Virus record (IMG/VR): IMGVR_UViG_3300042545_001134
Coordinates: 124,001-188,000 of that record
DNA: 64,000 nucleotides
Strand: one strand, 5' to 3'
Shown here in pieces: positions 10,923 to 62,328 of the stretch. Positions within the stretch are counted from its first letter, which is position 1, and every line of letters begins with the position of its first letter. Made by a program: the position numbers and the translations under genes. The notes below the pieces were generated by a model. It saw only the letters and a program-made list of their open reading frames with translations. It had not been told where the DNA came from and made no database searches.

Positions 10923-11036
10923 CTAATGATTGTAGGTAAAAGGGTCTCTTTTCTTTAATTCCCTTAGTTTTTCCCTGAATTTCTTCTTCCGTTTATAGTC
11001 TAACCAAATTCCTTTAATCCACTGTATTATTTTCAT
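10923..11036 (-). CDS. Small basic peptide (37 aa, KRDPFTY motif)
   Basis: Hand translation MKIIQWIKGIWLDYKRKKKFREKLRELKKRDPFTYNH*; ATGA overlap with the carbamoyltransferase stop. Confidence 0.65.
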   Translation of the reverse strand: MKIIQWIKGIWLDYKRKKKFREKLRELKKRDPFTYNH

Positions 11037-12703
11037 TTTTTTGTTATTATGTAGTTATTAATCACCAATATATCTATTTCGGTATCCAAAAATGTCTCTA
11101 CCGCATCTTGTGGGGTGAGTACCATAGTTTTATCTTTAATATTAAAAGATGTGTTAAGTAATATTGGATACCCTGTTATGATTTCAAACTTTTTTAATAG
11201 GTGGTATATGTCATTGTACGGTATAACGGATTGAATTCTTGCCGTCCCATCTACATGAACCACCGCCGGTAGTTTATCGATATATTTTTCTTCCACCTCT
11301 ACCACTTGGTTCATATAGGGAATGAAATCACCACTTTTAAAGTATTTCTTTTGTGATTCAAACAATACCATTGGGGCAAAGGGTCTAAACCCTTCTCTTT
11401 TTTTGATTACTTTGTTGATTCTATCCTTCATATTAGGTGAAGTCGGGTTCGCCAATATTGACCTATGACCTAACGCTCTAGAACCAAATTCAATCTTACC
11501 TTGAAACCACCCAACTATCTTGTTTCTTTTTAATTCCATCGCAATTTTATCATGAACTGATGTAATCGTTTCATATCTTTTATAAGTTATCCCATTTGTG
11601 TTTTTTAACACGTCAAGAATTTCCTCATTTGAGTATGATGGACCTAAAAAAGGATTCGTGTGAACCCTAACGGGTGTTTTCTTTTGATGAAAGTAATTTA
11701 AACATGCACCAATACAAGAACCCGCGTCAGATGGTGCTGGTGGGACCCACACGTTTTTAAAGTCAGTATTTTCTTTTATTTTCCCATTTGCGGTTCCGTT
11801 GTATGCGCATCCACCGGCCAATGCAAGATTTTTTGAATCACTGAATAAGTGAACATCCTTTAAAATCTCAAATAATACGTGTTCATACTTTTCTTGAACG
11901 GATGCTGCAATGTTTTTATGTTCCTGTGTTATATCTTCTTCGGGTAATCTATTTTCAACACCCATTAATTCAATCAAATCTTCGTTGAACATTAGGTCAT
12001 CTCTATCCCATGTGAAATAAATCATATTTGTTTTTAACGACACACAATTGTGTATCACCAACTTATCAATCTTATCTCTATATGGTTCGGGGTCCCCGTA
12101 AGATGCAAGTCCCATCATTTTATATTCACCTTCGTTTGGTTTAAATCCAAGGAACGATGTCATTGCAGAATAGAATAAACCAATTGAATGTGGGTAAACC
12201 GCCAGTGGTATAATCTTAAATGAATCTTTATTCACATATGCGGCCGATAATGTTTCCTTCTCACCAACACCGTCTACCGATAAGACAACACAATCTTTAA
12301 ATGGTGATGTGTAATATGAATAATATAAATGTGAATCGTGATGTTTTGAGTAGAAGATATTGTCTGATAACTTTCTCAACTCTCTTTCTAATGACCAATA
12401 ATTGTATTTGGTTCTTATTAGGGTTTTGGCAACATATATTGGACGCTCAATAAAATTTCTGAAGAATGTATTTTTAACTCTCTCAAGTTTAATTTTTGGG
12501 TCTTCATAATAACAAATCATTTCAACATCTTTCTTTTTGATGTTATATTTTTTGTAGATGTATTGTAACGTATTAACTGGAAATCTATAATCATGTTTTA
12601 CCCCTGTGAATTTTTCTTCTTCACATGCAAAAACCAACTCCCCATTTTTGAACAAACAGACAGATGAGTCATGATAATATGATGATATACCAATTACGTA
12701 CAT
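11033..12703 (-). CDS. Carbamoyltransferase (NodU/CmcH family)
   Basis: GISSYYHDSSVCL...EEEKFTGVKHD, HHDSH, SVDGVGE, LAGGCAYNG, GWFQGKIEFGSRALGHRSIL, KKREGFRPFAP, HVDGTARIQ, LLNTSFN. Confidence 0.95.
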   Translation of the reverse strand: MYVIGISSYYHDSSVCLFKNGELVFACEEEKFTGVKHDYRFPVNTLQYIYKKYNIKKKDVEMICYYEDPKIKLERVKNTFFRNFIERPIYVAKTLIRTKYNYWSLERELRKLSDNIFYSKHHDSHLYYSYYTSPFKDCVVLSVDGVGEKETLSAAYVNKDSFKIIPLAVYPHSIGLFYSAMTSFLGFKPNEGEYKMMGLASYGDPEPYRDKIDKLVIHNCVSLKTNMIYFTWDRDDLMFNEDLIELMGVENRLPEEDITQEHKNIAASVQEKYEHVLFEILKDVHLFSDSKNLALAGGCAYNGTANGKIKENTDFKNVWVPPAPSDAGSCIGACLNYFHQKKTPVRVHTNPFLGPSYSNEEILDVLKNTNGITYKRYETITSVHDKIAMELKRNKIVGWFQGKIEFGSRALGHRSILANPTSPNMKDRINKVIKKREGFRPFAPMVLFESQKKYFKSGDFIPYMNQVVEVEEKYIDKLPAVVHVDGTARIQSVIPYNDIYHLLKKFEIITGYPILLNTSFNIKDKTMVLTPQDAVETFLDTEIDILVINNYIITKK

Positions 12704-23213: not shown

Positions 23214-25166
23214 TTAAAAGACAACCCACAAACTCCAGTTATCTGCTCCACCGATAATTGATGGTTCTGTCCAACCGGCGTATCCACATACACCCGTTTT
23301 AAGTGGGTTACCACCATTGACACCTATACCGAACGCAGAACCTGCGGCACCATATGACAACGCACCTGTATTTCCGGTACTCTCATCCAATATACTACCA
23401 ACTCGTATTCTTCCTCCTGAACTACCTCCACCACCACCATAGTGTCCCTCATGTTTTAAATCCATACCCATTAGGTATATTTCAGTACCAAGAGCACTGG
23501 TGTATCGTCTATCTGCACCAACTAAACTTCTATAGTCAATACTGTTACCGAAATGTGGTGAACTTCTATTTGCTGAACTATTCCAACTTCTTGTTTGTGC
23601 TGCGTACATACTACTCACTTCACTTGCCAATGAGAATGTTGATTGGTAATTAAGTTCACCCATGGTCCAATAGAATTCCGTAAATGGAACGACGTTGTAA
23701 CTTTGATATTTACTACTAACTCCGTTTGTTAGGGTAAAATCATTTTGGTTATCTAATGTTGTGTTTTCCCAATATGAACTATCGGGTACATAACCACTTT
23801 CATTTCCACCTTTCATTACGCAAACCATTGCCTTATTTAAATAAAATTTAACAGGTGCTTGAAACGCCGATTGTCCACTTGGTTGTAACCAATAGTTACC
23901 ATCTTTTGAAATACCTAAATTTTTTAAATAAGTGGCACTTGGAGCCGCTAACGCTTGGGTGCTACCATCCTTAACTGATGGTAATGAAAATCTACCTTTA
24001 TATTGTTGATAGTTATTTAAAATTTCATTTTCGGTTAATGCCCTGTTATAAACTTTTGTAACGTCTACTTGACCATTTAATTTATAAGTACCGTAACCAC
24101 TATGATTACTTTGTCCAATCCAAGTTCCGTATATTGGATATGCTCCCATTTTTGTGTCAACATAAACACCGGCAGATTGTCCATTAATATATAATCTCAC
24201 TCTACCATCTGTTGCACTTATTGTTTCGTAAATCCCAACAACATGATTATAATTGGTTTTTGGTTGGCACGCAACTGTTGCGTTTCCACTAACCGTGTAT
24301 TGATATCCTACAGTGTCGGGTGGCCCACTTCTTGTTGATAAACTAACAATATCGGATGAATATGAGTACCACAAATTAAAACGATAATTTTCAAATAACG
24401 GTCCGTCATTACCTGATGCTCCACTAGCAATTTTAAAAACTTGTTCAACGGTTACCGCAGAAACGCTCGATGGGAAATAATCACTAACATTACCTAAATC
24501 AATTCTATCATCTGTTCCATCTAAAACGGGTTTACCATTTGCATCAAAAGAAGATGCCGATAAATCAATAGTTGTTAAACCCACAATATCTAATAACCCT
24601 TGTGTTACACTTCTTGAACCGTCAACAAATGGTGTGGCAAACGAACCAGCCTCAATTTGTGGCATTGTTACTTCCCATGACGAAAAATCATCACAATAAG
24701 TTCCACCGAATGATATTAAATAAAAGGTACCGTTAGTTCCCGTGCAATTTTGTGTGTTGGACACTCTAATCCACTCACCGGGAGACGATTTACTATGGTA
24801 CGCTGCGGTGTCACCGATTCCAAAACCACTTGTATAGACTGTACCACCATTATTATTTGCCGAACCTCCAATATACCTAATATATGCGGAAAATGTGTAT
24901 GTTCCGGTTGATGGTAATGATATACCACCCATAACGACACCATTCCAAGAGCCAAGATTTGACATTCGATATCCTGTTGTTCCAAACTCTGTTGTAAACG
25001 TAACAGGTGTACCACAAGAATAGTTACCAAAATTCGCCATAGTTGACGCATTGGTAACATAATTTGTTGTTGGTTTACCCTTAAATGAATTTTTAGTTTC
25101 ACCAACATCATACCCAAAGGTTAATCCTGATGTTGAAATTTTTCCATATCCCGAATTTACTGACAT
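23214..25166 (-). CDS. LamG/ConA-like lectin protein with CBM-like insert and C-terminal fibrinogen/intelectin-like domain
   Basis: GLTFGYD..NSFKGKPTTN; insert ending PQIEAGSFATPF; LDGTDDRI..LNGQVDVTKVYNRALTENEILNNY; then SATYL..DGNYWLQPSG. Confidence 0.8.
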   Translation of the reverse strand: MSVNSGYGKISTSGLTFGYDVGETKNSFKGKPTTNYVTNASTMANFGNYSCGTPVTFTTEFGTTGYRMSNLGSWNGVVMGGISLPSTGTYTFSAYIRYIGGSANNNGGTVYTSGFGIGDTAAYHSKSSPGEWIRVSNTQNCTGTNGTFYLISFGGTYCDDFSSWEVTMPQIEAGSFATPFVDGSRSVTQGLLDIVGLTTIDLSASSFDANGKPVLDGTDDRIDLGNVSDYFPSSVSAVTVEQVFKIASGASGNDGPLFENYRFNLWYSYSSDIVSLSTRSGPPDTVGYQYTVSGNATVACQPKTNYNHVVGIYETISATDGRVRLYINGQSAGVYVDTKMGAYPIYGTWIGQSNHSGYGTYKLNGQVDVTKVYNRALTENEILNNYQQYKGRFSLPSVKDGSTQALAAPSATYLKNLGISKDGNYWLQPSGQSAFQAPVKFYLNKAMVCVMKGGNESGYVPDSSYWENTTLDNQNDFTLTNGVSSKYQSYNVVPFTEFYWTMGELNYQSTFSLASEVSSMYAAQTRSWNSSANRSSPHFGNSIDYRSLVGADRRYTSALGTEIYLMGMDLKHEGHYGGGGGSSGGRIRVGSILDESTGNTGALSYGAAGSAFGIGVNGGNPLKTGVCGYAGWTEPSIIGGADNWSLWVVF

Positions 25167-25169
25167 ATC

Positions 25170-26381
25170 TTAAATAAACTTAGATTTTGTATTTGTATAT
25201 AGTTTATTAATTTCAGTTGCATTCAACACTTCATTGTATACCATAGATAGTGGTAATTTACCTTCATATGATGAGTGGTATTCTCTACCAATCATCGCGG
25301 TCGACGCTCTCGCAGTTCCACCCAAAAATCCCGTATTGGCACTATTAATCGATTGACCATTCAAATAAAGAATTAAACCTCCCGCTATATTGTAGGTACA
25401 CGCTAACATATTCCAAGAATTTAATGGTGTACTTCCACCTCCAAGTAAATAATCATTTGCCCCATTATTGTTACCAACCCATGCGGCCAAACCACCATGA
25501 TAATAACTCATTAATTTAACACCATGTCTATATGCTGTATCAGTACAAATTATTGTTCTATGTGGTGCACCTGTTCCACCATTCCAATAAAACCAACCAG
25601 CAAGTGTTACATCACCGGTTATTGTACTTATTGGTCCGTTTGTGATGACACCATAACTATTCGAACCATCAAAATATATCTGACCATTATTATCGAATCC
25701 ACCATTGGTCATTGTCACCGTTGAATTACCTGTTACATCGACAATTGCATTTGTTGTACTTCTTGTTCCTAAAACTAAAGATGTCATGTGGTTTTTTTGT
25801 TCGACTTGATGTCCAAAATACCATATTTTATCCCCAATATATGTTCCTATGTAGTTACTAATATAAATTCCATCCTCGTTAGCTGCTGTGGTTCCACTTG
25901 CAGTTATTTTTATCCATTGATTGGCTGGCCATGTACTTGTATCTGTATTTCCATTATAAGCCAAATTGGCTAAACCCACATTTGTAATATTGGTTCTTAA
26001 ATATGGTTGGGACGCACCTGCCCTGCTTTGTCTGTACCATACTGAAACGGTATATGTTGTTGATGGGGATACGTATGTAAACCCACACCCAAATTGTACA
26101 CTCCCACCCGTTGCGGTACTTCTTCCACTTAATACTCTAAGGTTTGTGGCATCAACCCCCGGAGTTGATGGTTTTGGAACATCGGTTTCGTTATCGTTGT
26201 ATTCCCATGAACCCACATTCACCCATGATATTGGTGCTGCCAAATATTCACTACCACCTTGACCATTATTATATGAAAGGTTGGTTGTTGGTTCTCCTTT
26301 AAATGAGTTTGCAGTGTCAGTTACATCGTAACTGAATATCAATCCACTATTGTTAATATTTGGTCCTAAACTTTGTGACAT
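25170..26381 (-). CDS. LamG/ConA-like lectin protein with CBM-like insert
   Basis: GLIFSYD..NSFKGEPTTN, TYTVSVWYR, QVEQKNH, YFDGSNSY, WNMLACTY, YEGKLPLSMVYN. Confidence 0.8.
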   Translation of the reverse strand: MSQSLGPNINNSGLIFSYDVTDTANSFKGEPTTNLSYNNGQGGSEYLAAPISWVNVGSWEYNDNETDVPKPSTPGVDATNLRVLSGRSTATGGSVQFGCGFTYVSPSTTYTVSVWYRQSRAGASQPYLRTNITNVGLANLAYNGNTDTSTWPANQWIKITASGTTAANEDGIYISNYIGTYIGDKIWYFGHQVEQKNHMTSLVLGTRSTTNAIVDVTGNSTVTMTNGGFDNNGQIYFDGSNSYGVITNGPISTITGDVTLAGWFYWNGGTGAPHRTIICTDTAYRHGVKLMSYYHGGLAAWVGNNNGANDYLLGGGSTPLNSWNMLACTYNIAGGLILYLNGQSINSANTGFLGGTARASTAMIGREYHSSYEGKLPLSMVYNEVLNATEINKLYTNTKSKFI

Positions 26382-27088
26382 TATAAACCGAATCTATTTT
26401 TTGTTGCGTTATAGTTTTGTGTTATTTCCGTTGGACTTAATGGTCGATTATAAATCCTATAAATTGGAATTGCACCATTTGTGGCATAAGACCCACCATC
26501 ATATGCTCCAATGGATATTGGGCTCGATGTGTTTTGAGAGTATACATTATTTGTGTCGTTTAATACCAAGGTTGTGTTAGAATATAATCTTCGATTAACC
26601 CCATCATGTGTTGCCACAATATTTCTCCAAGTACCTGCAGATGACCCAATACTTGCACCACCATCATTTCCATTTGTTCCTTGTGTTCTGAAGGTCAGAG
26701 TAGAACAATAATATAGTTCCCAAGAACCATTCCATTTAGTAAACGCAGTACACACATATGATGTTTCTCTAATCCACATATCTATGGTCATACCATTCTC
26801 ACATAACGCTTGGTCAAGGATACTTGTATTTGAGATTAATGCGTAGTTATTTGCATCACCATCACTTCCACCAAGATGTCTATCAAACATCATATATTTT
26901 GTTGTTGTGTCGTATCCCGATGTATTTCCCGCAGATGGTGAATTCATATTAATCATGCTAGCGTTATGACCATATCCACTTAAATCGTACCATGTGGTAC
27001 CACTACCCGGATATGATGTACTATCCATGGAATCTAATAAAACTATTAAACCATCTGTAACTAATCTCGAACTAAAATGTAATGCCAT
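26381..27088 (-). CDS. LamG/ConA-like lectin protein (no insert)
   Basis: TDGLIVLLD..SYPGSGTTWYDLSG...IYRIYNRPLSPTEITQNYNATKNRFGL. Confidence 0.85.
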   Translation of the reverse strand: MALHFSSRLVTDGLIVLLDSMDSTSYPGSGTTWYDLSGYGHNASMINMNSPSAGNTSGYDTTTKYMMFDRHLGGSDGDANNYALISNTSILDQALCENGMTIDMWIRETSYVCTAFTKWNGSWELYYCSTLTFRTQGTNGNDGGASIGSSAGTWRNIVATHDGVNRRLYSNTTLVLNDTNNVYSQNTSSPISIGAYDGGSYATNGAIPIYRIYNRPLSPTEITQNYNATKNRFGL

Positions 27089-27100
27089 ATCTTAAATACT

Positions 27101-29170
27101 TTATTTAATCCAAATACTATAGTAGTATGTCCCACCAATATTTGCCGGTGGAAAATCTTGACCCGCACCATAAACTGAACCAGGTATGATATCTCTATAA
27201 TCAATGGTACCACCTCTATTGGTAAAACAACCAATCCCTGAAGGACCGTCAACGCCATCAGCGGCATCATGTCGATGCCACGCAATCATAGTTCTATCTT
27301 TATTTCCGTCTTGAGCCCCGTCAATTTCACCGTATTTAAATAATAATTTACTCTTACCTGATGATTGTAAAACTGGGTCATCAACTCCAAAATTTGTTAT
27401 ATTAAGTGCCTTAACTCTATTTCTATTAAATGCATCATTTGATGCATCGGAACCGAGTGCTCCCCATTTTAATGAACCAAACCAACTTGATAATGAAGAA
27501 TTATTGGATTTAATCTGACCTTCATTTGTATATAATAATTTACGTTGTGAATTACCTGCATCTTTTATCATTATCTGTGAGAAGGGGATTGATGACCATC
27601 CTGTATTTTTATAATCGGAAACAAACGTCGGAGTCGAACCCCCAAAAGTTGTATTATCATCCCACGGCGGACATGATTGAATTGCATTCATATCATTACT
27701 CCATTTATGATATGTTGAGTTATTACTCGGAGCATCCTCATCGTCGATTGTCCCGACATGAACCCATGGTGCGCCTACACTATTAAAATCAATATACGCC
27801 TGAAATGGTGTTGAACCTGATGTTGGTTTTAACCAATAAACACCGTCAGTTCTATATCCAACATCATATAATAATTGAGCACTTGGCGATGCTGATTCCG
27901 ATGCGGTACCCAAAGTATTAACCGCCGTTAGTGATTTTACATCTCTTAAAACAAATCTATCTTTATAATGTAGGTAGTTTTTATGAACTTCCTCCGGTGT
28001 TAATTCTTTATTATAAATTTTAAGAACGGGAATGTCTCCTTTATAATAGTATGCTTTGACCGTATCAATATCATATCTACCAATACTTACACTATTAAGT
28101 AAAGAAATTGTTGATGTTTGACCCCCTCCATAGTGCCACAAAGTACCATCCAAATAAATTCTCATAATACCTGTGGTTGAATTCTTACTAACCACCCAAT
28201 GATGATTACCAAGATAATTATCAGACGACCCAATTGCTTTAGATATTCTATTAAACGGTCTACCAAAATCCCAATAAACATTTCCATCACCCCATGGTAG
28301 GTGTAAATTTAAATCTTGATTTCCTCCACTACCACCCGCAATAATTGAGTTATTCTGTAACGCACCACTCCACGATGTTACTATCTCGATTGTTATTTGA
28401 TTTCCTGTTGGTATTGCCGACGGACTCAAGTTGATGTAATCATCAGAACCATCAAAATTTATTTTTGGATTTGTATCTGAATTAAAGGTTACGTTCGTTA
28501 AATCTAATGAATGATTATTAGTTAAATCTTTTAACCCTTGGGTTACAGAACGAGTACCATAAACATATTGTGATATTGCGGTACTATTTAAATCTTCTTT
28601 GAATGGTCCCGCCCAAAATATAGTGATTGGAACATTTAATGATGCACTTAACGGGTTAATTGCCCAATATTTTCCATCGGATTGTGTTACCGTATTATAC
28701 CATAATACCCTTGCTCTAAACCAACCATCCCCCATATCTTCGGGTGCACAGCTTTGACATTGCCAACCACCAATATTTGAATAGTGTAGATAAATTGGTG
28801 TACCAGCCATTGGTACTGTTGGTTTAAAAAATATTGAGTGTCCCGTGTATCTATTCGCTAACCCACCGCCAGATGCTCCACCATAAAGAACAACACCTAA
28901 TCCGGGATTATTCGCATTCGATAACCAAGAAACACCACTACCATCCAATGGAGTTAGTGTTTGTCTCCATATTGGTGCACCTTTATATGTGTCACTTGTT
29001 TGAGTTAAATTTGTTGTAACACTTCCCGGTACGTTATTGTAGTTATATAAAGGTTCATTAAATCCGATATTATTTGTTGGTCTACCCAAATATGAATTAT
29101 ATGTGTCACCCGTGTCAAATCCGAATACTAAACCATCTTTTGTTGTTGAACCGTTTTGTTTACTTGCCAT
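27101..29170 (-). CDS. LamG/ConA-like lectin protein with insert and C-terminal fibrinogen/intelectin-like domain
   Basis: GLVFGFD..NSYLGRPTNN, GTRSVTQGLKDLT, FDGSDDYI, YKGDIPVLKIYNKELT; then SAQLL..DGVYWLKPTSGSTPFQAYIDF. Confidence 0.8.
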   Translation of the reverse strand: MASKQNGSTTKDGLVFGFDTGDTYNSYLGRPTNNIGFNEPLYNYNNVPGSVTTNLTQTSDTYKGAPIWRQTLTPLDGSGVSWLSNANNPGLGVVLYGGASGGGLANRYTGHSIFFKPTVPMAGTPIYLHYSNIGGWQCQSCAPEDMGDGWFRARVLWYNTVTQSDGKYWAINPLSASLNVPITIFWAGPFKEDLNSTAISQYVYGTRSVTQGLKDLTNNHSLDLTNVTFNSDTNPKINFDGSDDYINLSPSAIPTGNQITIEIVTSWSGALQNNSIIAGGSGGNQDLNLHLPWGDGNVYWDFGRPFNRISKAIGSSDNYLGNHHWVVSKNSTTGIMRIYLDGTLWHYGGGQTSTISLLNSVSIGRYDIDTVKAYYYKGDIPVLKIYNKELTPEEVHKNYLHYKDRFVLRDVKSLTAVNTLGTASESASPSAQLLYDVGYRTDGVYWLKPTSGSTPFQAYIDFNSVGAPWVHVGTIDDEDAPSNNSTYHKWSNDMNAIQSCPPWDDNTTFGGSTPTFVSDYKNTGWSSIPFSQIMIKDAGNSQRKLLYTNEGQIKSNNSSLSSWFGSLKWGALGSDASNDAFNRNRVKALNITNFGVDDPVLQSSGKSKLLFKYGEIDGAQDGNKDRTMIAWHRHDAADGVDGPSGIGCFTNRGGTIDYRDIIPGSVYGAGQDFPPANIGGTYYYSIWIK

Positions 29171-30444
29171 TATAATCCGTATTGTGATTTTGTTCTATTG
29201 TAATTATTTTGAATTTCTGATTGGGTTAACCCTTTTGAGTATGCCCTTACACTTCCAATTTTTCCATTAAAATTATATGATGAATTTCCTATTCCCCAAC
29301 TCCATGTTGGGGAACCGATTGTACATTGAGTTCCTTGTGGTGTGATTAAACCACTTCTCGTTGCGGTGTATTCCGTACCATTTAAATAAAATCTACAGGA
29401 TGTACCATACCATGTATAAGCCACATGCATCCAAGTGTTTACAGGGGCACTAACACCTGTTAACCAATCTTCAGTACTACTTCCATAATTAATAACGTAC
29501 CAAACACCATCTGAAATCATTAATGACCTCGATGCCCCATAAACTTGCGCTTCCCCCATTGAGAAAACATAATTTTGACCACTTACGTTTGTTGGGTGAC
29601 ACCATGCCTCAATTGTTCCAAATGCCTGTTGGTGACCTGTAATTCCCGTGAACGACATGTAATCGTCAGTACCATCAAACTCAAGTTCCCCAAGAGTTTT
29701 AATAGGTAATCCAAAGTTTAAATGAGCAACTGCTGATGTATCAACAGGATAGTTTTCAAACGCCCAACCAAATGCATTTCCAACACCAAGACCTGGTCTA
29801 CCAACCAAAACCCATTCGGGTCTTCCCGGTGATGGGTTCCACCCTGAAACCAATGACGGTGCACCTAAATCCAACATCATATTGACTGTGTTAGTGTCGT
29901 ATTGGTCAGCGGCGTGTGAACCAATTAAAATAAATGTACAATTTGGGAAACGTCCTCTTATTCTACTATAATCTCTAACTAACCAAACTAAATTATTTCC
30001 ATAACCAGTTTCTGAACCACCATAGTTGTCATAAGTATGGTAACCACTTGAATTTGAACCAACAAAATACGAATCCGCAACCCAAGAACTTGTATCGTTA
30101 TCCCAAGCCCACATACCTATTCCTCTACCAACACCAAATAAATTGTACGAACCTCTAATATTGTATCCCGTGTGAATCCCTTGGTATAAAAAACCTATTG
30201 AATCGGTACCGTAGTTACCTTCGGGGTATGTTTTCCCACCTCCAGTATAATATGTTTTATTTGAAAGTCTTAATCCATTAATGAAAAGACTTTTATTACT
30301 ATTAATTTGATTAACCACACCATCAGTACTTCCATTATATCCACCACACCCAATAGGGCTAACACCCGTACCAATGTTATGGGTGTCAACTACAAAATAT
30401 GCATCTTGTAAACTCGATAATATGGTTCCCGATTTTGACGACAT
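29170..30444 (-). CDS. LamG/ConA-like lectin protein with ILEI/PANDER-like segment
   Basis: C-terminal FDGTDDY..WMHVAYTW..FNGKIGSVRAYSKGLTQSEIQNNY; middle FILIGSHAAD..MLDLGA..R.EWVLVGRPG. Confidence 0.75.
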   Translation of the reverse strand: MSSKSGTILSSLQDAYFVVDTHNIGTGVSPIGCGGYNGSTDGVVNQINSNKSLFINGLRLSNKTYYTGGGKTYPEGNYGTDSIGFLYQGIHTGYNIRGSYNLFGVGRGIGMWAWDNDTSSWVADSYFVGSNSSGYHTYDNYGGSETGYGNNLVWLVRDYSRIRGRFPNCTFILIGSHAADQYDTNTVNMMLDLGAPSLVSGWNPSPGRPEWVLVGRPGLGVGNAFGWAFENYPVDTSAVAHLNFGLPIKTLGELEFDGTDDYMSFTGITGHQQAFGTIEAWCHPTNVSGQNYVFSMGEAQVYGASRSLMISDGVWYVINYGSSTEDWLTGVSAPVNTWMHVAYTWYGTSCRFYLNGTEYTATRSGLITPQGTQCTIGSPTWSWGIGNSSYNFNGKIGSVRAYSKGLTQSEIQNNYNRTKSQYGL

Positions 30445-49506: not shown

Positions 49507-50061
49507 TTATGTGTTTCTTCTTGTTCTAATCAAAGGTTCCATTGCCGATGTATATGTCGGTAAAAACTTAACTAACTTGTCTAACATAGTCATAGTTTCG
49601 TTTTCAATTGGTAACATGTCTGAGTTAATATATAAACCACCATCTTGACCAACAATCATTACAAAGTTGATGTCTAAGTCACTAATAGTACCATCTAACC
49701 TAATTTGGTTATCGTCAATTGTAAAACCTGGGTCTAATTCCGCAAGTTGTGCGACTTGTTGTCTGAATGAGTCAATCAATTGACTTATTGAACCCTTTTC
49801 ATCTTCCTGTAGTTTAACATCCTCTTGGTCATATGAAAGTAATTTAACTTCCACATCGTTAACCACTTCTACGTTGTCAAACTGTTCTTGACTTGACTCA
49901 GGTGCTGGTTCATTAATATCGTCACCGGGTTCCATTGGTCTTGTTTCCTCAACCTCTTCGGTGATTGTTTTCTTGTTTGTCACTTTTGACTCGTTAAGAT
50001 TTCTCATTATATTGAGGAAACCTTTCATCTCGTCATATGGTGTCTGTTTCTTGTTGCTCAT
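49507..50061 (-). CDS. Hypothetical acidic protein (184 aa)
   Basis: ORF track. Confidence 0.7.
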   Translation of the reverse strand: MSNKKQTPYDEMKGFLNIMRNLNESKVTNKKTITEEVEETRPMEPGDDINEPAPESSQEQFDNVEVVNDVEVKLLSYDQEDVKLQEDEKGSISQLIDSFRQQVAQLAELDPGFTIDDNQIRLDGTISDLDINFVMIVGQDGGLYINSDMLPIENETMTMLDKLVKFLPTYTSAMEPLIRTRRNT

Positions 50062-50656
50062 TTCTAAAAAATATTCTAAAATTAAATGATGGGTTTATAT
50101 CTGTATAAATATTCGAAAAGTTGGATTTACAAACAACTCCATGGAATTTTATGACATTTTCTAAATAACCTTGTGATTGTACCACCTGTTTAGGTATACT
50201 ATGTAACCCACATAAGTGGTCACACAGGTCAGCAACAGACTCTAATTGACTGTCACTGTACTTATCCCAGAAATAATAGTTTCTCCAATTCCTAACGAAT
50301 GGTTCGGACCTATATGGGTCTCCAATCCAATTATTTAAAAACCCCGTGATGGTATTTTTACTTAACCACCCGAGGTTTTCAATTGCTATTTTAATAAATT
50401 GTTTATCTACTTTAGGTTCCTCAAAAGTATTTGAGTAGTAATTTGTATCGTATAATTGATACACCGTACCTAATTTAGTAACCACGAAATGTGGTATTTC
50501 AGAGTATTTCCCGTTATTTCTATACTTTAACTTATTAATGAAGTCGTCGGCTCTTCTACCGGTATCGTATAGTAATATTTGGGTTTTTTTTGTTTTTCTT
50601 TTTGTTATGTTTAGTACCTTACTATCTAAACCTTCTACGTTGTGTATTTCCAACAT
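50033..50656 (-). CDS. N-acetylmuramoyl-L-alanine amidase-like (Amidase_2 fold), Zn ligands apparently substituted
   Basis: QILLYDT, IPHFVVTKLGTVYQLYD, IKIAIENLG, YSDSQLESVADLC, GVVCKSN..TDINP. Confidence 0.65.
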   Translation of the reverse strand: MLEIHNVEGLDSKVLNITKRKTKKTQILLYDTGRRADDFINKLKYRNNGKYSEIPHFVVTKLGTVYQLYDTNYYSNTFEEPKVDKQFIKIAIENLGWLSKNTITGFLNNWIGDPYRSEPFVRNWRNYYFWDKYSDSQLESVADLCDHLCGLHSIPKQVVQSQGYLENVIKFHGVVCKSNFSNIYTDINPSFNFRIFFRNEQQETDTI

Positions 50657-50831
50657 TCCTTGTAATCGTTTTTCTCATGGGGGAAGGTCTTGGCGATAAC
50701 TCCGCCGTTGGTGTCTCCTCCACGTTATTGTCCTCAGATTCCCAATAAAGGTCATCATTTTTAATAGTATCCGTAACCTTTTCCAAACCATCGTTTGGAG
50801 AATTTATTACTTGGGATTGGGACTCTGTTAC
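50622..50831 (-). other. -1 frame extension (69 aa) of gene 50828-52051 via slippery site A_AAA_AAG (50837-50831)
   Basis: GAA AAA AAA AAG TAA; the -1 frame stays open as VTESQSQVINSPNDGLEKVTDTIKNDDLYWESEDNNVEETPTAELSPRPSPMRKTITRNVGNTQRRRFR*, with a TGA closing that frame just upstream (50849-50847). Confidence 0.6.
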
Positions 50832-52051
50832 TTTTTTTTTTCTTCCTCAGATTCTATCGTTGGAAGTTCTTCAGTTGGTGTTTCGATAAGAGGTTCTGAT
50901 AATGGTTCCTCGTATGGTGGTTCATCTTCAAAACCATCCATTAACGTAATATCCCACTCTTTAAACTCTTCCATATCTTCAGGTGAATATATTTCATCCG
51001 ATTCAATTGGCATATCCTCAATCGTTAATTGTGGTACTTCAACCACAGGAATATTTTCGAGTAAAACCTCTATAACCTCCTCTGGTGTTACCGTTGCGGT
51101 TGGGGTGAATGTCGGAACCTCAGTCTCTGTTGGAGTCATTGTAGGTGTCTCTGTTGGGGTATTAGTTGGGGTTGGTGTTACTGTAATTGTAGGTGTCTCT
51201 GTTGGGGTATTAGTTGGGGTTGGTGTTACTGTAATTGTAGGGGTTGGAGTCACCTCAGGTATAATAAGTGGTTCCGTACCAAATCCATCTAATTCTTTTT
51301 CATAGACCCCAATAGGTTGTTCAGTAATTTGGGGTTCTTGTTGTTTTTTATACTCCTCCGCCGCCTTAACTAACGTATCATTTGGTTTAGGTGGGTTGTT
51401 TAAATATCTTTCCAATATGGCCAAATCTTCTTCAGTTAATCTAACTCTTGAAACCTCACCAACAATGTCTTTTGCATCAACCACAGGGATTTCTTCTTTA
51501 ACTTCTTCTTTGGATTTATTTTTCTGCTCCCTTATGTATTCACTAATACCACCATCATCAATAATTGCGTCAATTCCCCTTTCTTTATTTTCTTGAGTAA
51601 ACTTAACTAACATGTGTAAGAATGACAATGAAATGATTGGTAACATTCCACCAGCAAAAAACGATAAGAATCGTTTATGACCAACAAGGTCTGTTTGGTC
51701 AACTCCCATGAATTCAACAAATGGGGCAACCAATTCTACCCATGATTTAAATGAGTCACTCGTAACATCAATAAACGAATACGCAAAATAGACATTACCA
51801 ATAAATTGAATAAGGGTCACTATACCAAATGGAAAATATACTTTTCTACCCATATCGGCGGAAATTGCTGCAAGTGCTGATAATGCGGCAATCTCAATAC
51901 CAATTGATAGGTAAACCGCCCAAGTAACTGGGTTTGATAACCCATACCACTTTGTTACGTGTGATATAGATACCAATGCAACCGTAATAATCGGTATTAA
52001 AAATGCCGATATAATGATTGTTTTATAATTCCTTTTAAACCAAGTCTCCAT
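50828..52051 (-). CDS. Four-TM membrane protein with acidic Pro/Thr-rich cytoplasmic or periplasmic tail
   Basis: Four hydrophobic segments in aa 10-150, then an E-rich region and TPTPT repeats. Confidence 0.8.
   Translation of the reverse strand: METWFKRNYKTIIISAFLIPIITVALVSISHVTKWYGLSNPVTWAVYLSIGIEIAALSALAAISADMGRKVYFPFGIVTLIQFIGNVYFAYSFIDVTSDSFKSWVELVAPFVEFMGVDQTDLVGHKRFLSFFAGGMLPIISLSFLHMLVKFTQENKERGIDAIIDDGGISEYIREQKNKSKEEVKEEIPVVDAKDIVGEVSRVRLTEEDLAILERYLNNPPKPNDTLVKAAEEYKKQQEPQITEQPIGVYEKELDGFGTEPLIIPEVTPTPTITVTPTPTNTPTETPTITVTPTPTNTPTETPTMTPTETEVPTFTPTATVTPEEVIEVLLENIPVVEVPQLTIEDMPIESDEIYSPEDMEEFKEWDITLMDGFEDEPPYEEPLSEPLIETPTEELPTIESEEEKKK
51141..51240. repeat. 48-bp perfect tandem repeat x2 (encodes ITVTPTPTNTPTETPT)
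   Basis: gtaggtgtctctgttggggtattagttggggttggtgttactgtaatt at 51141-51188 and 51189-51236. Confidence 0.95.
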
Positions 52052-52338
52052 TAATTCAATTTTGATTCTAATGATTTTAATTCATTGTCGATTTCGGTTT
52101 GTCTTGTAACATCTAAAATCTTTCTGTCTGTTGATTGAATCATTCTTTTTTCTGCCTTCAATCCTTCAATTTGTAATCTAACATTTAATTCTTCTTTTGT
52201 ATAAGTCGAATCTTTAATTGTCTCGATTTCTTTTCTCATTTTAGACAATTCTCTACCGTCACCACATCCTTTAAGGAATGTTAACACGGCAATTACAAGA
52301 ACAATTACAATGAAGTTATTTTCAACGAACTTTTTCAT
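52051..52338 (-). CDS. Small membrane/lipoprotein-like coiled-coil protein
   Basis: N-terminal hydrophobic helix ending FLKGC (possible lipobox), then a coiled coil. Confidence 0.6.
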   Translation of the reverse strand: MKKFVENNFIVIVLVIAVLTFLKGCGDGRELSKMRKEIETIKDSTYTKEELNVRLQIEGLKAEKRMIQSTDRKILDVTRQTEIDNELKSLESKLN

Positions 52339-52349
52339 AATTTTTTATT

Positions 52350-53159
52350 TTATAAATAGTTTAGTAATCCATAACTATCGTTTCTAAGTTTTTTAAGTGC
52401 CTTGTCACGTAGTTGTCTAATACGTTCTTTGGTACATCCAAACTCTTCACCGAGGTCTTCCAAATTCATTTCTACACCAGCAAGACCGTAGGATTTTTCA
52501 ATTATGACCTTTTCTCTGTCATCTAAGATAGATAACATCATATCCACTCTTCTACGAACTTCTTCGGGAGTGTTTAATAGTGCCTCAGGGTCATCGGCAT
52601 CTTTATTTGGGATTACATCAATAAGTTGGTCCCCATCTTCATTTATTTCATCATTAAGGTTTACACAATGTGGTAAAATAAAATCTCTTCCCTTATCTTC
52701 ATAGTTAATGAAAAATTGGTCGTCTTTGTATGGTTGGTTTTTTTGTCTTTTCTGATTTTCTTGAATGATATTCGAAGGTAATCGAATGATTCTTGCATTC
52801 TCATTAAGAGATGCCATGATTGATTGTTTCACCCACCAAACGGCGTATGATATAAATTTGAAACCACTAGTTGGGTCGAATCTTTCCGACGCTTTCATTA
52901 GACCGATATTACCTTCAGATATTAAATCCATAATATCCATTCCTTGACCTTGATATAATTTGGCAACGGTAATAACAAAACGAAGATTTCCTACAACTAA
53001 TTCATTGAGATAATTTTCTCTTTCTTTTTTTGGTAGGTCTTTTCTTTTTAGTTCAGTAAAAATTATTTCTTGTCTCTCGTGAGAAATAACTTTAATCTTT
53101 CTAAGGTCTTTTATGTATTGTTGTATTTCCTCCGTGTTGATTAATATTGATTTACTCAT
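52350..53159 (-). CDS. rpoD: RNA polymerase sigma-70 factor, RpoD/SigA family
   Basis: Region 2 NLRFVITVAKLY..DLISEGNIGLMKASERFDP..FKFISYAVWWVKQSI; region 4 MNLEDLGEEFGCTKERIRQL..KAL.KLR; no region 1.1. Confidence 0.93.
   Translation of the reverse strand: MSKSILINTEEIQQYIKDLRKIKVISHERQEIIFTELKRKDLPKKERENYLNELVVGNLRFVITVAKLYQGQGMDIMDLISEGNIGLMKASERFDPTSGFKFISYAVWWVKQSIMASLNENARIIRLPSNIIQENQKRQKNQPYKDDQFFINYEDKGRDFILPHCVNLNDEINEDGDQLIDVIPNKDADDPEALLNTPEEVRRRVDMMLSILDDREKVIIEKSYGLAGVEMNLEDLGEEFGCTKERIRQLRDKALKKLRNDSYGLLNYL
52352..52358 (-). promoter_or_regulatory. TATTTAT putative late-promoter element
   Basis: Within the last codons of the sigma gene, 13 nt upstream of ATG 52338. Confidence 0.45.
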
Positions 53160-61690: not shown

Positions 61691-61728
61691 GTAGAATATA
61701 AGTAAAAAGATTTATAAAAAAAAATTAA

Positions 61729-62328
61729 TTATAAACTTTTTTGCATATTAACATGACCGATAACGGCAGTTGCTGCGTCACTCATATCGTAATTCTCTTT
61801 TCTGAGTTGTCCCGTTTTACCATATAACCACTCAACCTCAGGACACACCGCATTAACGTGTTCCCATATAACGTGTTTTTTATCAATGTCTTTTGGTAAA
61901 CCACCAAATAAAACTTTCCTACCTTTATCGTTCATACTTACCAAATCAGGAAATGCAAATTTCCTTGCGTTGTAAGTTGAAATAAATGTTGGGAGTACTC
62001 CAAGAACATCATAACACGACTTGAGAATCAATGTGTTATACCTTAAAAGGGTACCAACTGTGTAAATGTTATTTGATTGTAATAGTGGCTCTTCAATCAC
62101 CACCTTGGTAATACCAACATCTCTGTAGTTCTCCAATTGTTTTTTAAACGCATCGGCCTTCAATAAAAGTTCTTCAATTTTATCTTCGGGTTGAGGTTTA
62201 ATTTTTGGTGAAAAATGTGTCAGTTCTAATAATTTAGAAGAACCGATATCAAATAGCGCCCATCCGATGGTCTTAGTTGAAATGTCTAAACCCAAAATTT
62301 TGGGTGCATTCTTTAGTTTTATACTCAT
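61729..62328 (-). CDS. ruvC: RuvC-like Holliday junction resolvase
   Basis: ILGLDISTKTIGWA, VVIEEP, DMSDAATAV. Confidence 0.8.
   Translation of the reverse strand: MSIKLKNAPKILGLDISTKTIGWALFDIGSSKLLELTHFSPKIKPQPEDKIEELLLKADAFKKQLENYRDVGITKVVIEEPLLQSNNIYTVGTLLRYNTLILKSCYDVLGVLPTFISTYNARKFAFPDLVSMNDKGRKVLFGGLPKDIDKKHVIWEHVNAVCPEVEWLYGKTGQLRKENYDMSDAATAVIGHVNMQKSL

What the first reader, a model, noticed from the sequence alone, without database searches (positions are those of the whole stretch)
50622..50850. Candidate programmed -1 frameshift (A_AAA_AAG-stop) giving two isoforms of a 4-TM protein
The gene ends GAA AAA AAA AAG TAA, the classic dnaX/IS-type slippery heptamer in the correct phase, directly before the stop. 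The -1 frame has a TGA just upstream and no ATG for 150 nt, yet stays open for 69 codons. It fills the otherwise unexplained 170-nt gap, has the same E/S/T/P-rich composition, and ends in an Arg-rich tail (NTQRRRFR) overlapping the amidase-like gene. This is not the tail-assembly-chaperone context. The nearest hairpin (TCCAAAC-GATG-GTTTGGA, 50799-50782) is about 31 nt away, farther than a canonical stimulator. The A10 run also allows transcriptional slippage or a one-base assembly error.
Basis: partly seen in the sequence, partly recalled or inferred. Interest (0 to 1): 0.8.

Follow-up and report, generated by a model that had tools for sequence, protein, structure and literature searches.

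The report
Three-frame poly-A slippage site in phage gene
A run of ten A's at the end of a jumbo-phage membrane-protein gene is a conserved recoding site, kept in about 90 distinct relatives, that most likely lets RNA polymerase slip and so make three versions of the protein with different tails.

Summary
The 407-aa 4-TM gene (minus strand, 50828..52051) ends GAA AAA AAA AAG TAA. The A10 run is 50841..50832. The -1 frame is closed by TGA 5 codons upstream and then runs 69 codons to an Arg-rich end that overlaps the amidase gene.

It is not an assembly error. Independent assemblies carry A10, and 90 distinct homologous loci from uncultured freshwater jumbo phages have the same layout.

What is conserved is an A9-A11 run (7, 70 and 13 loci; never 8 or fewer), not A_AAA_AAG (14 of 90). 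No 3' stimulator is conserved. About a third of sites have a covarying stem-loop directly 5' of the run.

The +1 frame is also maintained: median 23 codons against about 6 expected, and dN/dS 0.20. It encodes a conserved basic tail. Beyond the +1 stop, the -1 frame shows a normal coding pattern.

The site therefore serves three C-termini: none, short and long. The likeliest mechanism is transcriptional slippage, as in tssM1, Thermus dnaX and IS1447. Ribosomal shifting on the A-run is not excluded, because no raw RNA reads were available. The protein's function is unknown.

The parts
50828..52051 (-). Main ORF (0 frame, 'S' product, 407 aa). It has an N-terminal 4-TM domain (about residues 1-150, window 51602..52051), a TacA1-like segment (residues 192-235, window 51347..51478), and a Pro/Thr-rich acidic tail ending ...ESEEEKKK.
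   Evidence: Pfam TacA1 scores 26.4-27.5 bits against a cut-off of 21. More than 3900 homologs were found. AF2 predicts the helices but with low confidence.
50832..50841 (-). A10 homopolymer (T10 on the + strand): the proposed slippage or recoding site.
   Evidence: The homologous run is A9 in 7 loci, A10 in 70 and A11 in 13, of 90 distinct split loci, and never shorter. It is also kept in the in-frame variants.
50842..50866 (-). Weak stem-loop directly 5' of the run: CTTCC...GGAAG with an inner GAT/ATC stem. It is the homolog of stronger hairpins in relatives.
   Evidence: About -4.8 kcal/mol and not significant alone. Family-wide, a perfect stem of 7 bp or more ends within 2 nt of the run in 25 of 78 sites, against 4.1% of control positions. 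Compensatory pair changes are seen.
50847..50849 (-). TGA that closes the -1 frame just upstream of the run. Together with the 0-frame stop it defines a 16-nt window for the frame change.
   Evidence: The median overlap window across 90 loci is 16 nt.
50622..50831 (-). 'L' extension in the -1 frame: 69 codons plus TAG. It contains the LYWExxD motif and the Arg-rich end RNVGNTQRRRFR. It would be reached by one extra A in the mRNA or by a -1 ribosomal shift.
   Evidence: It is in frame in A11 relatives. After the +1 stop, differences per site at codon positions 1/2/3 are 0.078/0.084/0.26, a coding pattern. No ATG is present in 54 of 90 extensions.
50761..50832 (-). 'M' extension in the +1 frame: 23 codons SNRVPIPSNKFSKRWFGKGYGYY plus TAA. 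It would be reached by loss of one A or gain of two.
   Evidence: It is open 18 codons or more in 84% of 82 sites, against 9% of control points. Synonymous resampling gives a median of 6 codons, and P=0.03 for the window. dN/dS is 0.20, against 1.09 for the -1 frame in the same stretch. The basic motif is conserved across clades.
50782..50799 (-). It equals the M-frame codons S K R W F G.
   Evidence: The T-to-C change in L006 and L024 is synonymous in the +1 frame and Leu-to-Ser in the -1 frame.
50033..50656 (-). Amidase_2 (endolysin-like) gene. Its first 35 nt overlap the end of the L extension.
   Evidence: Pfam PF01510 at 1.9e-8. The overlap is almost invariant, at 0.011/0.004/0.053 differences per site.
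52051..53159 (-). Upstream neighbours conserved with the gene: a sigma-70-family factor (52350..53159) and a 95-aa single-TM protein (52051..52338).
   Evidence: The gene order is the same in L084-L089.

Best explanation
The A10 run is a conserved, programmed recoding site that yields three C-terminal isoforms of one membrane protein.

The DNA-encoded frame stops right after the run and gives the tail-less 407-aa 'S' form. One extra A in the mRNA (A11) joins the body to the 69-codon 'L' extension, which ends in an Arg-rich tail overlapping the amidase start. One A fewer, or two extra (A9 or A12), joins it to a 23-codon basic aromatic 'M' tail.

The most likely engine is slippage of the transcribing bacterial-type RNA polymerase on the T10 template run. 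In many relatives a nascent-RNA stem-loop directly 5' of the run may help this. Ordinary translation of the mixed mRNAs then sets a fixed ratio of the three forms in every infected cell.

Shown here:
- the site, its conservation and the stability of the DNA run length;
- purifying selection on both alternative frames;
- the lack of independent start codons.

Inferred:
- that the frame change happens at the RNA level;
- the isoform ratios;
- any effect on translation of the overlapping amidase gene.

The biochemical role of the protein (4-TM anchor, TacA1-like segment, acidic linker) is unknown.
For: 1. Conservation. 90 distinct split loci all have A9-A11 (7/70/13). The run ends 0-4 nt before the 0-frame stop in 84 of 90. 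All need the -1 frame for the long extension. Of the top 120 protein clusters, 109 end at the K-run.
2. One-A toggles. L087 and L089 (A10, split) differ from L084 and L086 (A11, fused) by one A. Distant fused variants still keep an A10 run, and most keep the S/M/L layout.
3. The heptamer is not conserved. The base after the run is T in 52 loci, C in 24 and G in 14. No run of 8 or fewer occurs. Nine A/T is the length at which bacterial RNA polymerase slips efficiently (PMC5009743, PMC1088944).
4. The +1 frame is maintained. Its median open length is 23 codons, against 5 at control points and 6 after synonymous resampling. Its dN/dS is 0.20, against 1.09 for the -1 frame in the same stretch. Substitutions peak at its third codon position. 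Polymerase slippage, which gives both insertions and deletions, reaches both frames. IS1447 shows +1 and -1 slippage at about 16% each, and tssM1 mRNAs carry A10-A15.
5. The -1 frame is coding further downstream and has conserved motifs.
6. A 5'-adjacent stem-loop is enriched 8-fold and shows compensatory changes. This is the architecture of IS1447 and Roseiflexus IS630.
7. No conserved 3' structure exists at PRF spacing and Rfam finds nothing.
8. The DNA run length is stable. None of 26 clusters (77 near-identical contigs) is mixed, and DNA contigs of two runs carry A10.
Against: - There is no direct RNA evidence. Only Logan contigs were available, and the one metatranscriptome contig across the run reads A10. 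Contigs hide minority species.
- Every A9-A11 run also contains an in-phase A_AAA_AAA/N heptamer, so a ribosomal contribution cannot be excluded.
- The close 0-frame stop is also a feature that can favour ribosomal shifting.
- AAA (80%) and GAA (78%) codon bias would give a long A-run from an E-K-K-K motif fairly often. The 'run of 9 or more' argument is therefore suggestive, not decisive.
- The 5' hairpin is strong in only about a third of sites and weak in the window itself.
- It is unknown which polymerase transcribes this gene. No RNA polymerase gene was seen in the window.
Confidence: 0.6

Rival explanations
1. Ribosomal frameshifting on the A-run. A -1 slip of tRNA-Lys on A_AAA_AAG or A_AAA_AAA gives the L form, and a -2/+1 slip or 'sliding' on poly-A gives the M form. 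The mRNA stays A10.
For: An in-phase slippery heptamer is present in the window and necessarily within every A9-A11 run. The 0-frame stop lies 0-4 nt after the run in 84 of 90 loci. A_AAA_AAG is the best E. coli -1 motif (PMC4066793). The junction peptide would be identical to that from RNA slippage.
Against: G follows the run in only 14 of 90 loci. No site has just 7-8 A's, although 7 would suffice. The GAGG upstream of the run is not conserved. The selected +1 frame would need a second, different shift. The enriched hairpin lies 5' of the run, touching it, where it would be unwound inside the ribosome.
Confidence: 0.25
2. DNA-level phase variation. Replication slippage makes A9, A10 and A11 sub-populations, each encoding one isoform.
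For: Relatives differ by exactly one A (A10 against A11). Long homopolymers are mutation hot spots.
Against: None of 26 clusters of near-identical contigs (77 contigs from different assemblies) mixes run lengths. DNA contigs of two lake runs show A10 with no indel variant listed at a 1% reporting threshold. The consensus is the tail-less frame in about 90% of lineages, which would be odd if the tails matter and are only made by rare mutants.
Confidence: 0.05
3. The downstream ORFs are translated on their own from internal start codons, for example the TTG at 50786, as separate small proteins.
For: the ORF listing gives a 54-aa TTG ORF. Gene callers sometimes call a 50-aa gene here.
Against: 54 of 90 -1 extensions have no ATG at all, and only 6 have one in the first 20 codons. 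The +1 frame is open a median of 5.5 codons before the run and lacks any start codon in 32 of 82 sites. Both frames open exactly at the run. The extension is the in-frame C-terminus in fused relatives.
Confidence: 0.04
4. Sequencing or assembly error (true A11), or a decaying frameshifted pseudogene.
For: Homopolymers are error-prone. One extra A would give a single ORF.
Against: A10 is found in independent assemblies and runs. 90 distinct loci share the split layout, while assemblers do report A11 where it is in frame. Both alternative frames show purifying selection.
Confidence: 0.02

Closest known systems
Citrobacter rodentium tssM1 transcriptional frameshifting (PMC4256274)
   Same: A membrane-protein gene whose stop codon is directly preceded by a long A-run (A11). 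RNA polymerase adds A's, so a truncated and a full-length variant are made, and both are needed. No SD-like or 3' structure lies nearby.
   Different: That case is in a bacterial secretion system and has two products. Here the gene is in a jumbo phage, three frames appear to be used, and the site is conserved across a very large family. tssM1 slippage is shown experimentally; this one is not.
IS1447 (IS3 family) and Roseiflexus IS630 slippage sites (PMC6211511; PMC5009743)
   Same: A slippage-prone run directly follows an mRNA stem-loop. IS1447 has A9 and slips both +1 and -1 at about 16% each. A covarying stem abutting the run is seen in about a third of the phage sites.
   Different: In the IS elements only one slipped frame is productive (the transposase). 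Here both slipped frames are under selection. The hairpin is not universal and is weak in the window.
Thermus thermophilus dnaX (tau/gamma by slippage on A9)
   Same: A homopolymer of 9 or more inside a gene, giving a mixed mRNA population and a fixed ratio of long and short proteins. The phage family also shows both 'long form in frame' and 'short form in frame' configurations.
   Different: In Thermus both non-zero frames simply stop nearby. Here they encode conserved tails of 23 and 69 codons.
E. coli dnaX / IS-type -1 programmed ribosomal frameshift (A_AAA_AAG plus SD-like element plus 3' stem-loop)
   Same: An in-phase A_AAA_AAG is present in the window, and the -1 frame carries a functional extension.
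   Different: The heptamer identity, the 3' stimulator and the SD-like element are not conserved. A +1-frame product is also selected.
Paramyxovirus P/V/W, Ebola GP/sGP/ssGP and potyvirus P3N-PIPO polymerase stuttering
   Same: One homopolymer site gives access to all three frames, each with its own C-terminus, through insertion of one or two bases in the transcript.
   Different: Those are RNA viruses using viral RNA-dependent polymerases and short runs with specific context. This is a dsDNA phage, presumably using a bacterial-type polymerase.
Phage tail assembly chaperone G/GT -1 frameshift
   Same: A conserved phage recoding event that sets a ratio of a short form and a C-terminally extended form.
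   Different: The gene family and genomic context differ (the gene lies between a sigma factor and an amidase), as do the signal type and the number of frames used.

Membership tests
dnaX/IS-type -1 programmed ribosomal frameshift | In-phase X_XXY_YYZ slippery heptamer conserved among homologs | tested here: inconclusive
   The window has an in-phase A_AAA_AAG. Every A9-A11 run contains some in-phase A-heptamer, but A_AAA_AAG itself is present in only 14 of 90 loci.
dnaX/IS-type -1 programmed ribosomal frameshift | Stimulatory 3' stem-loop or pseudoknot about 5-9 nt downstream, or an SD-like element upstream | tested here: not met
   The nearest 3' hairpin is 31 nt away and is coding sequence of the +1 ORF. 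The mean z-score of the downstream 70 nt is -0.77, with no shared position. GAGG upstream is not conserved. Rfam finds nothing.
dnaX/IS-type -1 programmed ribosomal frameshift | Only the -1 frame carries a selected product | tested here: not met
   The +1 frame has dN/dS 0.20 and a median open length of 23 codons against about 6 expected.
Programmed transcriptional slippage at a homopolymer | Run of about 9 or more A or T at the frame junction, conserved | tested here: met
   A9 in 7 loci, A10 in 70 and A11 in 13, with none shorter. The run is also kept in in-frame variants.
Programmed transcriptional slippage at a homopolymer | Heterogeneous run length in mRNA but not in DNA | not testable with these tools
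   All runs are held as Logan contigs only. DNA contigs and one RNA contig read A10, and contigs drop minority variants.
Programmed transcriptional slippage at a homopolymer | Slipped frames encode conserved, selected products | tested here: met
   The -1 frame has conserved motifs and third-position variation. The +1 frame has dN/dS 0.20.
Programmed transcriptional slippage at a homopolymer | Nascent-RNA stem-loop 5'-adjacent to the run (a feature of the IS630 and IS1447 subclass) | tested here: inconclusive
   A stem of 7 bp or more ends within 2 nt of the run in 32% of 78 sites, against 4.1% of controls, with compensatory changes. The stem is weak in the window and absent in some clades.
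Pfam TacA1 (PF08681) domain | Score above Pfam's gathering cut-off | tested here: met
   26.4-27.5 bits against 21, covering residues 192-235 and profile positions 36-79 of 80. 11 of 17 relatives match. The match is partial-length, and no toxin partner was examined.
DUF2637 (PF10935) 4-TM domain | Sequence match to the Pfam model | tested here: not met
   No hit at E of 1 or below in 17 members. The only support is atlas similarity (feature score 0.70, TM-score 0.51), which is a lead.
Phage holin | Small membrane protein next to the endolysin gene that forms lethal membrane lesions | tested here: inconclusive
   It has 4 TM helices and lies directly upstream of, and overlapping, an Amidase_2 gene. 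However, it is 407 aa or longer, has no PHROG lysis hit, and its N-terminal domain is unusually conserved. Activity is not testable here.

The most novel reading that the evidence does not exclude
A dsDNA jumbo-phage lineage uses one poly-A 'editing' site, like the P/V/W site of paramyxoviruses, to make three C-terminal isoforms of a membrane protein in a fixed ratio. The isoforms are tail-less, short basic tail and long Arg-tailed. The mechanism would be RNA-polymerase slippage assisted by a nascent-RNA hairpin. Because only the long isoform's reading frame runs into the overlapping amidase start, the slippage rate would also gate endolysin translation or lysis timing.
Probability: 0.35. Interest if true: 0.85.

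Novelty: new variant of a known kind. Interest (0 to 1): 0.72.

Why it matters
Recoding in phages is known almost only from tail-assembly chaperones and a few capsid or lysis genes. Productive transcriptional slippage in bacteria is known mainly from IS elements, dnaX and secretion-system genes, and it normally has one useful slipped frame.

Here a single homopolymer appears to feed all three frames. Two alternative tails are under purifying selection in a family seen in many independent freshwater metagenome assemblies (90 distinct loci examined here).

This has three consequences:
- Gene callers split or truncate this gene everywhere, and the 'hypothetical' 50-aa ORFs downstream are artefacts.
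- It offers a natural, comparative test bed for what makes a bacterial-type polymerase slip: run length, a 5' hairpin and flanking bases.
- It links the isoform choice physically to the start of the neighbouring amidase gene.

Tried and rejected
- Megablast of the region against GenBank phages found no match. tblastn found only a 32%-identical 306-aa homolog in an uncultured 462-kb phage, without an A-run site and in a different context.
- RNA evidence: two run searches and the single read-laying run returned only Logan contigs. A10 appears in DNA and in one RNA contig, and no A11 or A9 variant is listed. The RNA unitig break at the run is not interpretable at depth 5-6.
- A possible second slip site in L025, L048, L073, L074 and L045, where the -1 extension is short, was rejected. 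These are simply shorter extensions that lack the Arg-rich tail.
- The GAGG upstream as an SD-like stimulator is not conserved.
- Stop-codon reassignment was rejected. The window's stop is TAA, and after the stop the 0 frame is open a median of only 6 codons.
- The AF2 model of the N-terminal 240 aa has mean pLDDT 62, too poor for a fold search, so none was run.
- Pfam, PHROGs and Rfam gave nothing for the extensions.
- The other long run in the window (A9 at 61716..61724) is intergenic and unrelated.
- Host: one 2.2-kb contig binned in an Emticicia MAG is only a hint.
Full report
**Observation.** The gene lies on the minus strand. ORF 50828..52051 (407 aa) ends GAG GAA GAA AAA AAA AAG TAA. 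The A10 run is 50841..50832. The -1 frame is closed by TGA at 50849..50847, then stays open for 69 codons after the run (50831..50625, stop 50624..50622). It ends NVGNTQRRRFR and overlaps the Amidase_2 gene (50033..50656) by 35 nt. This is the only homopolymer of 10 or more bases in the 64-kb window.

**Genomic setting.** The window comes from an uncultured freshwater jumbo phage. Identical copies occur on IMG/VR contigs of 310 and 245 kb, and 17 lake-water DNA runs hold the region. There is no close relative in GenBank phages. The gene order ClpP ... sigma-70-family factor, 95-aa TM protein, this gene, Amidase_2 is conserved.

**The protein.** It has a very conserved 4-TM N-terminal domain, a TacA1-like segment above Pfam's cut-off, and a Pro/Thr-rich acidic linker. 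Atlas searches suggest a DUF2637-like fold, but Pfam does not confirm this. The AF2 model is poor. Function is unknown.

**Not an error, and conserved.** Protein homologs number in the thousands. Of the best 120 clusters, 109 end at the K-run and 5 run on to an RNV...RRR tail. P0013 and P0017 carry the window's -1 extension in frame. Their DNA has A11 where the close relatives L087 and L089, and the window, have A10.

In 170 fetched loci I found 90 distinct 'split' sites:
- The run is A9 in 7, A10 in 70 and A11 in 13, and never 8 or fewer.
- The run starts at codon position 2 or 3.
- It is followed by T (52), C (24) or G (14).
- It ends 0-4 nt before a TAG or TAA stop in 84 of 90.
- The window between the -1-frame stop and the 0-frame stop is a median of 16 nt.
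- The -1 extension has a median length of 74 codons.

In-frame variants (L026, L044, L053, L070, L084, L086, L112, L136) still keep an A10 or A11 run at the junction. Among 26 clusters of near-identical contigs (77 contigs) none mixes run lengths. Logan DNA contigs of two runs, and one metatranscriptome contig, read A10.

**The -1 extension is coding.** It carries conserved motifs (LYWExDD, NPNQVIYDLENNxTIIP, RNVGNTQRRRFR). Its pairwise dN/dS is mostly 0.1-0.6. It lacks internal starts: 54 of 90 have no ATG.

**A third frame.** The +1 frame after the run is open for a median of 23 codons, and for 18 or more in 84% of 82 sites. At control points inside the extension the median is 5 codons and only 9% reach 18. 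Resampling synonymous codons of the -1 frame gives a median of 6, and P=0.03 for the window.

The substitution pattern was measured in 22 independent pairs, as differences per site at -1-frame codon positions 1/2/3:
- In the stretch that overlaps the +1 ORF: 0.083/0.21/0.106. The peak is at the third position of the +1 frame.
- Beyond the +1 stop: 0.078/0.084/0.26, which is ordinary -1-frame coding.
- In the amidase overlap: 0.011/0.004/0.053.

A sanity check upstream of the run shows the expected 0-frame pattern. Nei-Gojobori estimates on 18 ungapped independent pairs give dN/dS 0.20 for the +1 frame, 1.09 for the -1 frame and 1.8 for the 0 frame in that stretch.

The +1 tails align across clades: a basic R/K-x-P segment followed by an alternating hydrophobic segment such as KLWFG, RYSIITFG, NVKFSRI or NVRISRF. 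Their mean net charge is +4.8. In the window the tail is SNRVPIPSNKFSKRWFGKGYGYY (50832..50764, stop 50763..50761). The +1 frame is open only a median of 5.5 codons before the run and often has no start codon. It therefore has to be entered at the run.

**Mechanism.** Both non-zero frames are selected and both open at the run. The run is always 9 or more, the length at which bacterial RNA polymerase slips efficiently and at which selection against such runs in coding sequence becomes evident in many bacterial genomes (PMC5009743, PMC1088944). The flanking base varies. No 3' structure is shared. Rfam finds nothing and there is no terminator in the gap.

A perfect stem of 7 bp or more ends within 2 nt of the run in 25 of 78 sites, against 4.1% of control positions in the same genes. 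Compensatory changes occur in three geometry classes. That is the architecture of IS1447, where A9 follows a stem-loop and slips +1 and -1 at about 16% each, and of Roseiflexus IS630. The closest functional precedent is C. rodentium tssM1, where A11 lies just before the stop, mRNAs carry A10-A15, and both length variants are needed.

I therefore favour transcriptional slippage. A10 mRNA gives the tail-less form, A11 gives the long form, and A9 or A12 gives the medium form.

**Caveats.**
- No raw RNA reads could be examined.
- Every such run also holds an in-phase A-heptamer next to a stop codon.
- Codon bias (AAA 80%, GAA 78%) inflates A-runs in E-K-K-K motifs.
- The 5' hairpin is weak in the window.

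Ribosomal shifting or sliding on the A-run therefore remains a live rival.

**Consequences that are inferred only.** The long frame terminates 35 nt inside the amidase gene, so slippage may also tune amidase translation. This would parallel Shigella spa13/spa32. The minimal 231-234-aa relatives that lack the linker end in a basic tail overlapping the amidase start. This suggests that a basic C-terminal tail is the ancestral, functional end and that the DNA-encoded form here is the tail-less variant.

**Verdict.** This is a real, conserved recoding site. The proposed dnaX-type signal and the two-isoform picture are not the best reading. I rate it a new variant of a known kind (programmed slippage at a homopolymer), notable for three-frame use in a dsDNA phage.

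Noticed in passing
window 50622..50661 (minus strand); same region in L-loci: The last 12 codons of the long extension, which overlap the amidase start (AGGAATGTT...), are almost invariant across relatives at all three codon positions (0.011/0.004/0.053 differences per site). This suggests dual coding or a translational-coupling signal.
   Followed up: partly
window 50661 -> 50832 (run X15): One DNA contig (depth 16.6, only 21 nt on the shorter side) joins the A-run directly to 50661. That would fuse ...EEKKK in frame to RNVGNTQRRRFR, skipping the whole 170-nt extension. It may be a relative or a chance match and is not verified.
   Followed up: no
window ~51140..51260 and 51041: There is a tandem 48-nt Pro/Thr-coding repeat inside the gene. 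Relatives differ by whole repeat units (P0001 is 16 aa shorter). The metatranscriptome contig and P0002 carry a 27-nt insertion at 51041. The linker is therefore length-polymorphic.
   Followed up: partly
L084/L085/L086 vs L087/L088/L089: Close relatives differ by exactly one A in the run (A11 fused, A10 split), while the immediate stop and the +1 tail are kept. The DNA-encoded default isoform has switched during evolution.
   Followed up: yes
L078, L080, L081, L082 (IMG/VR): Short 231-234-aa homologs have the 4-TM and TacA1-like core but no acidic linker and no A-run. They end in a basic tail (for example ...RLSYTRRNV) that overlaps the amidase start.
   Followed up: partly
L090 (CAYUFZ010000430.1): The only hit in 185,579 species genomes is a 2.2-kb contig binned in an 'uncultured Emticicia sp.' MAG. 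This is a weak hint of a Bacteroidota host, or a mis-binned phage contig.
   Followed up: no
window 61716..61724: This is the only other run of 9 or more bases in the window (A9 on the + strand, T9 in gene sense). It lies in the gap just after the stop of the gene 61729..62328 and is not in a coding frame.
   Followed up: yes
window 23214..30444 and 11033..12703: Three large paralogous ORFs carry Laminin_G_3 (concanavalin-like) domains, and there is a carbamoyltransferase gene. No RNA polymerase subunit was recognised among the ten large ORFs scanned.
   Followed up: no
window 52350..53159: A sigma-70-family factor (regions 2 and 4) lies two genes upstream, followed by a 95-aa single-TM protein. 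The sigma, TM protein, 4-TM protein order is conserved and could indicate a sigma/anti-sigma-like module rather than a lysis cassette.
   Followed up: no
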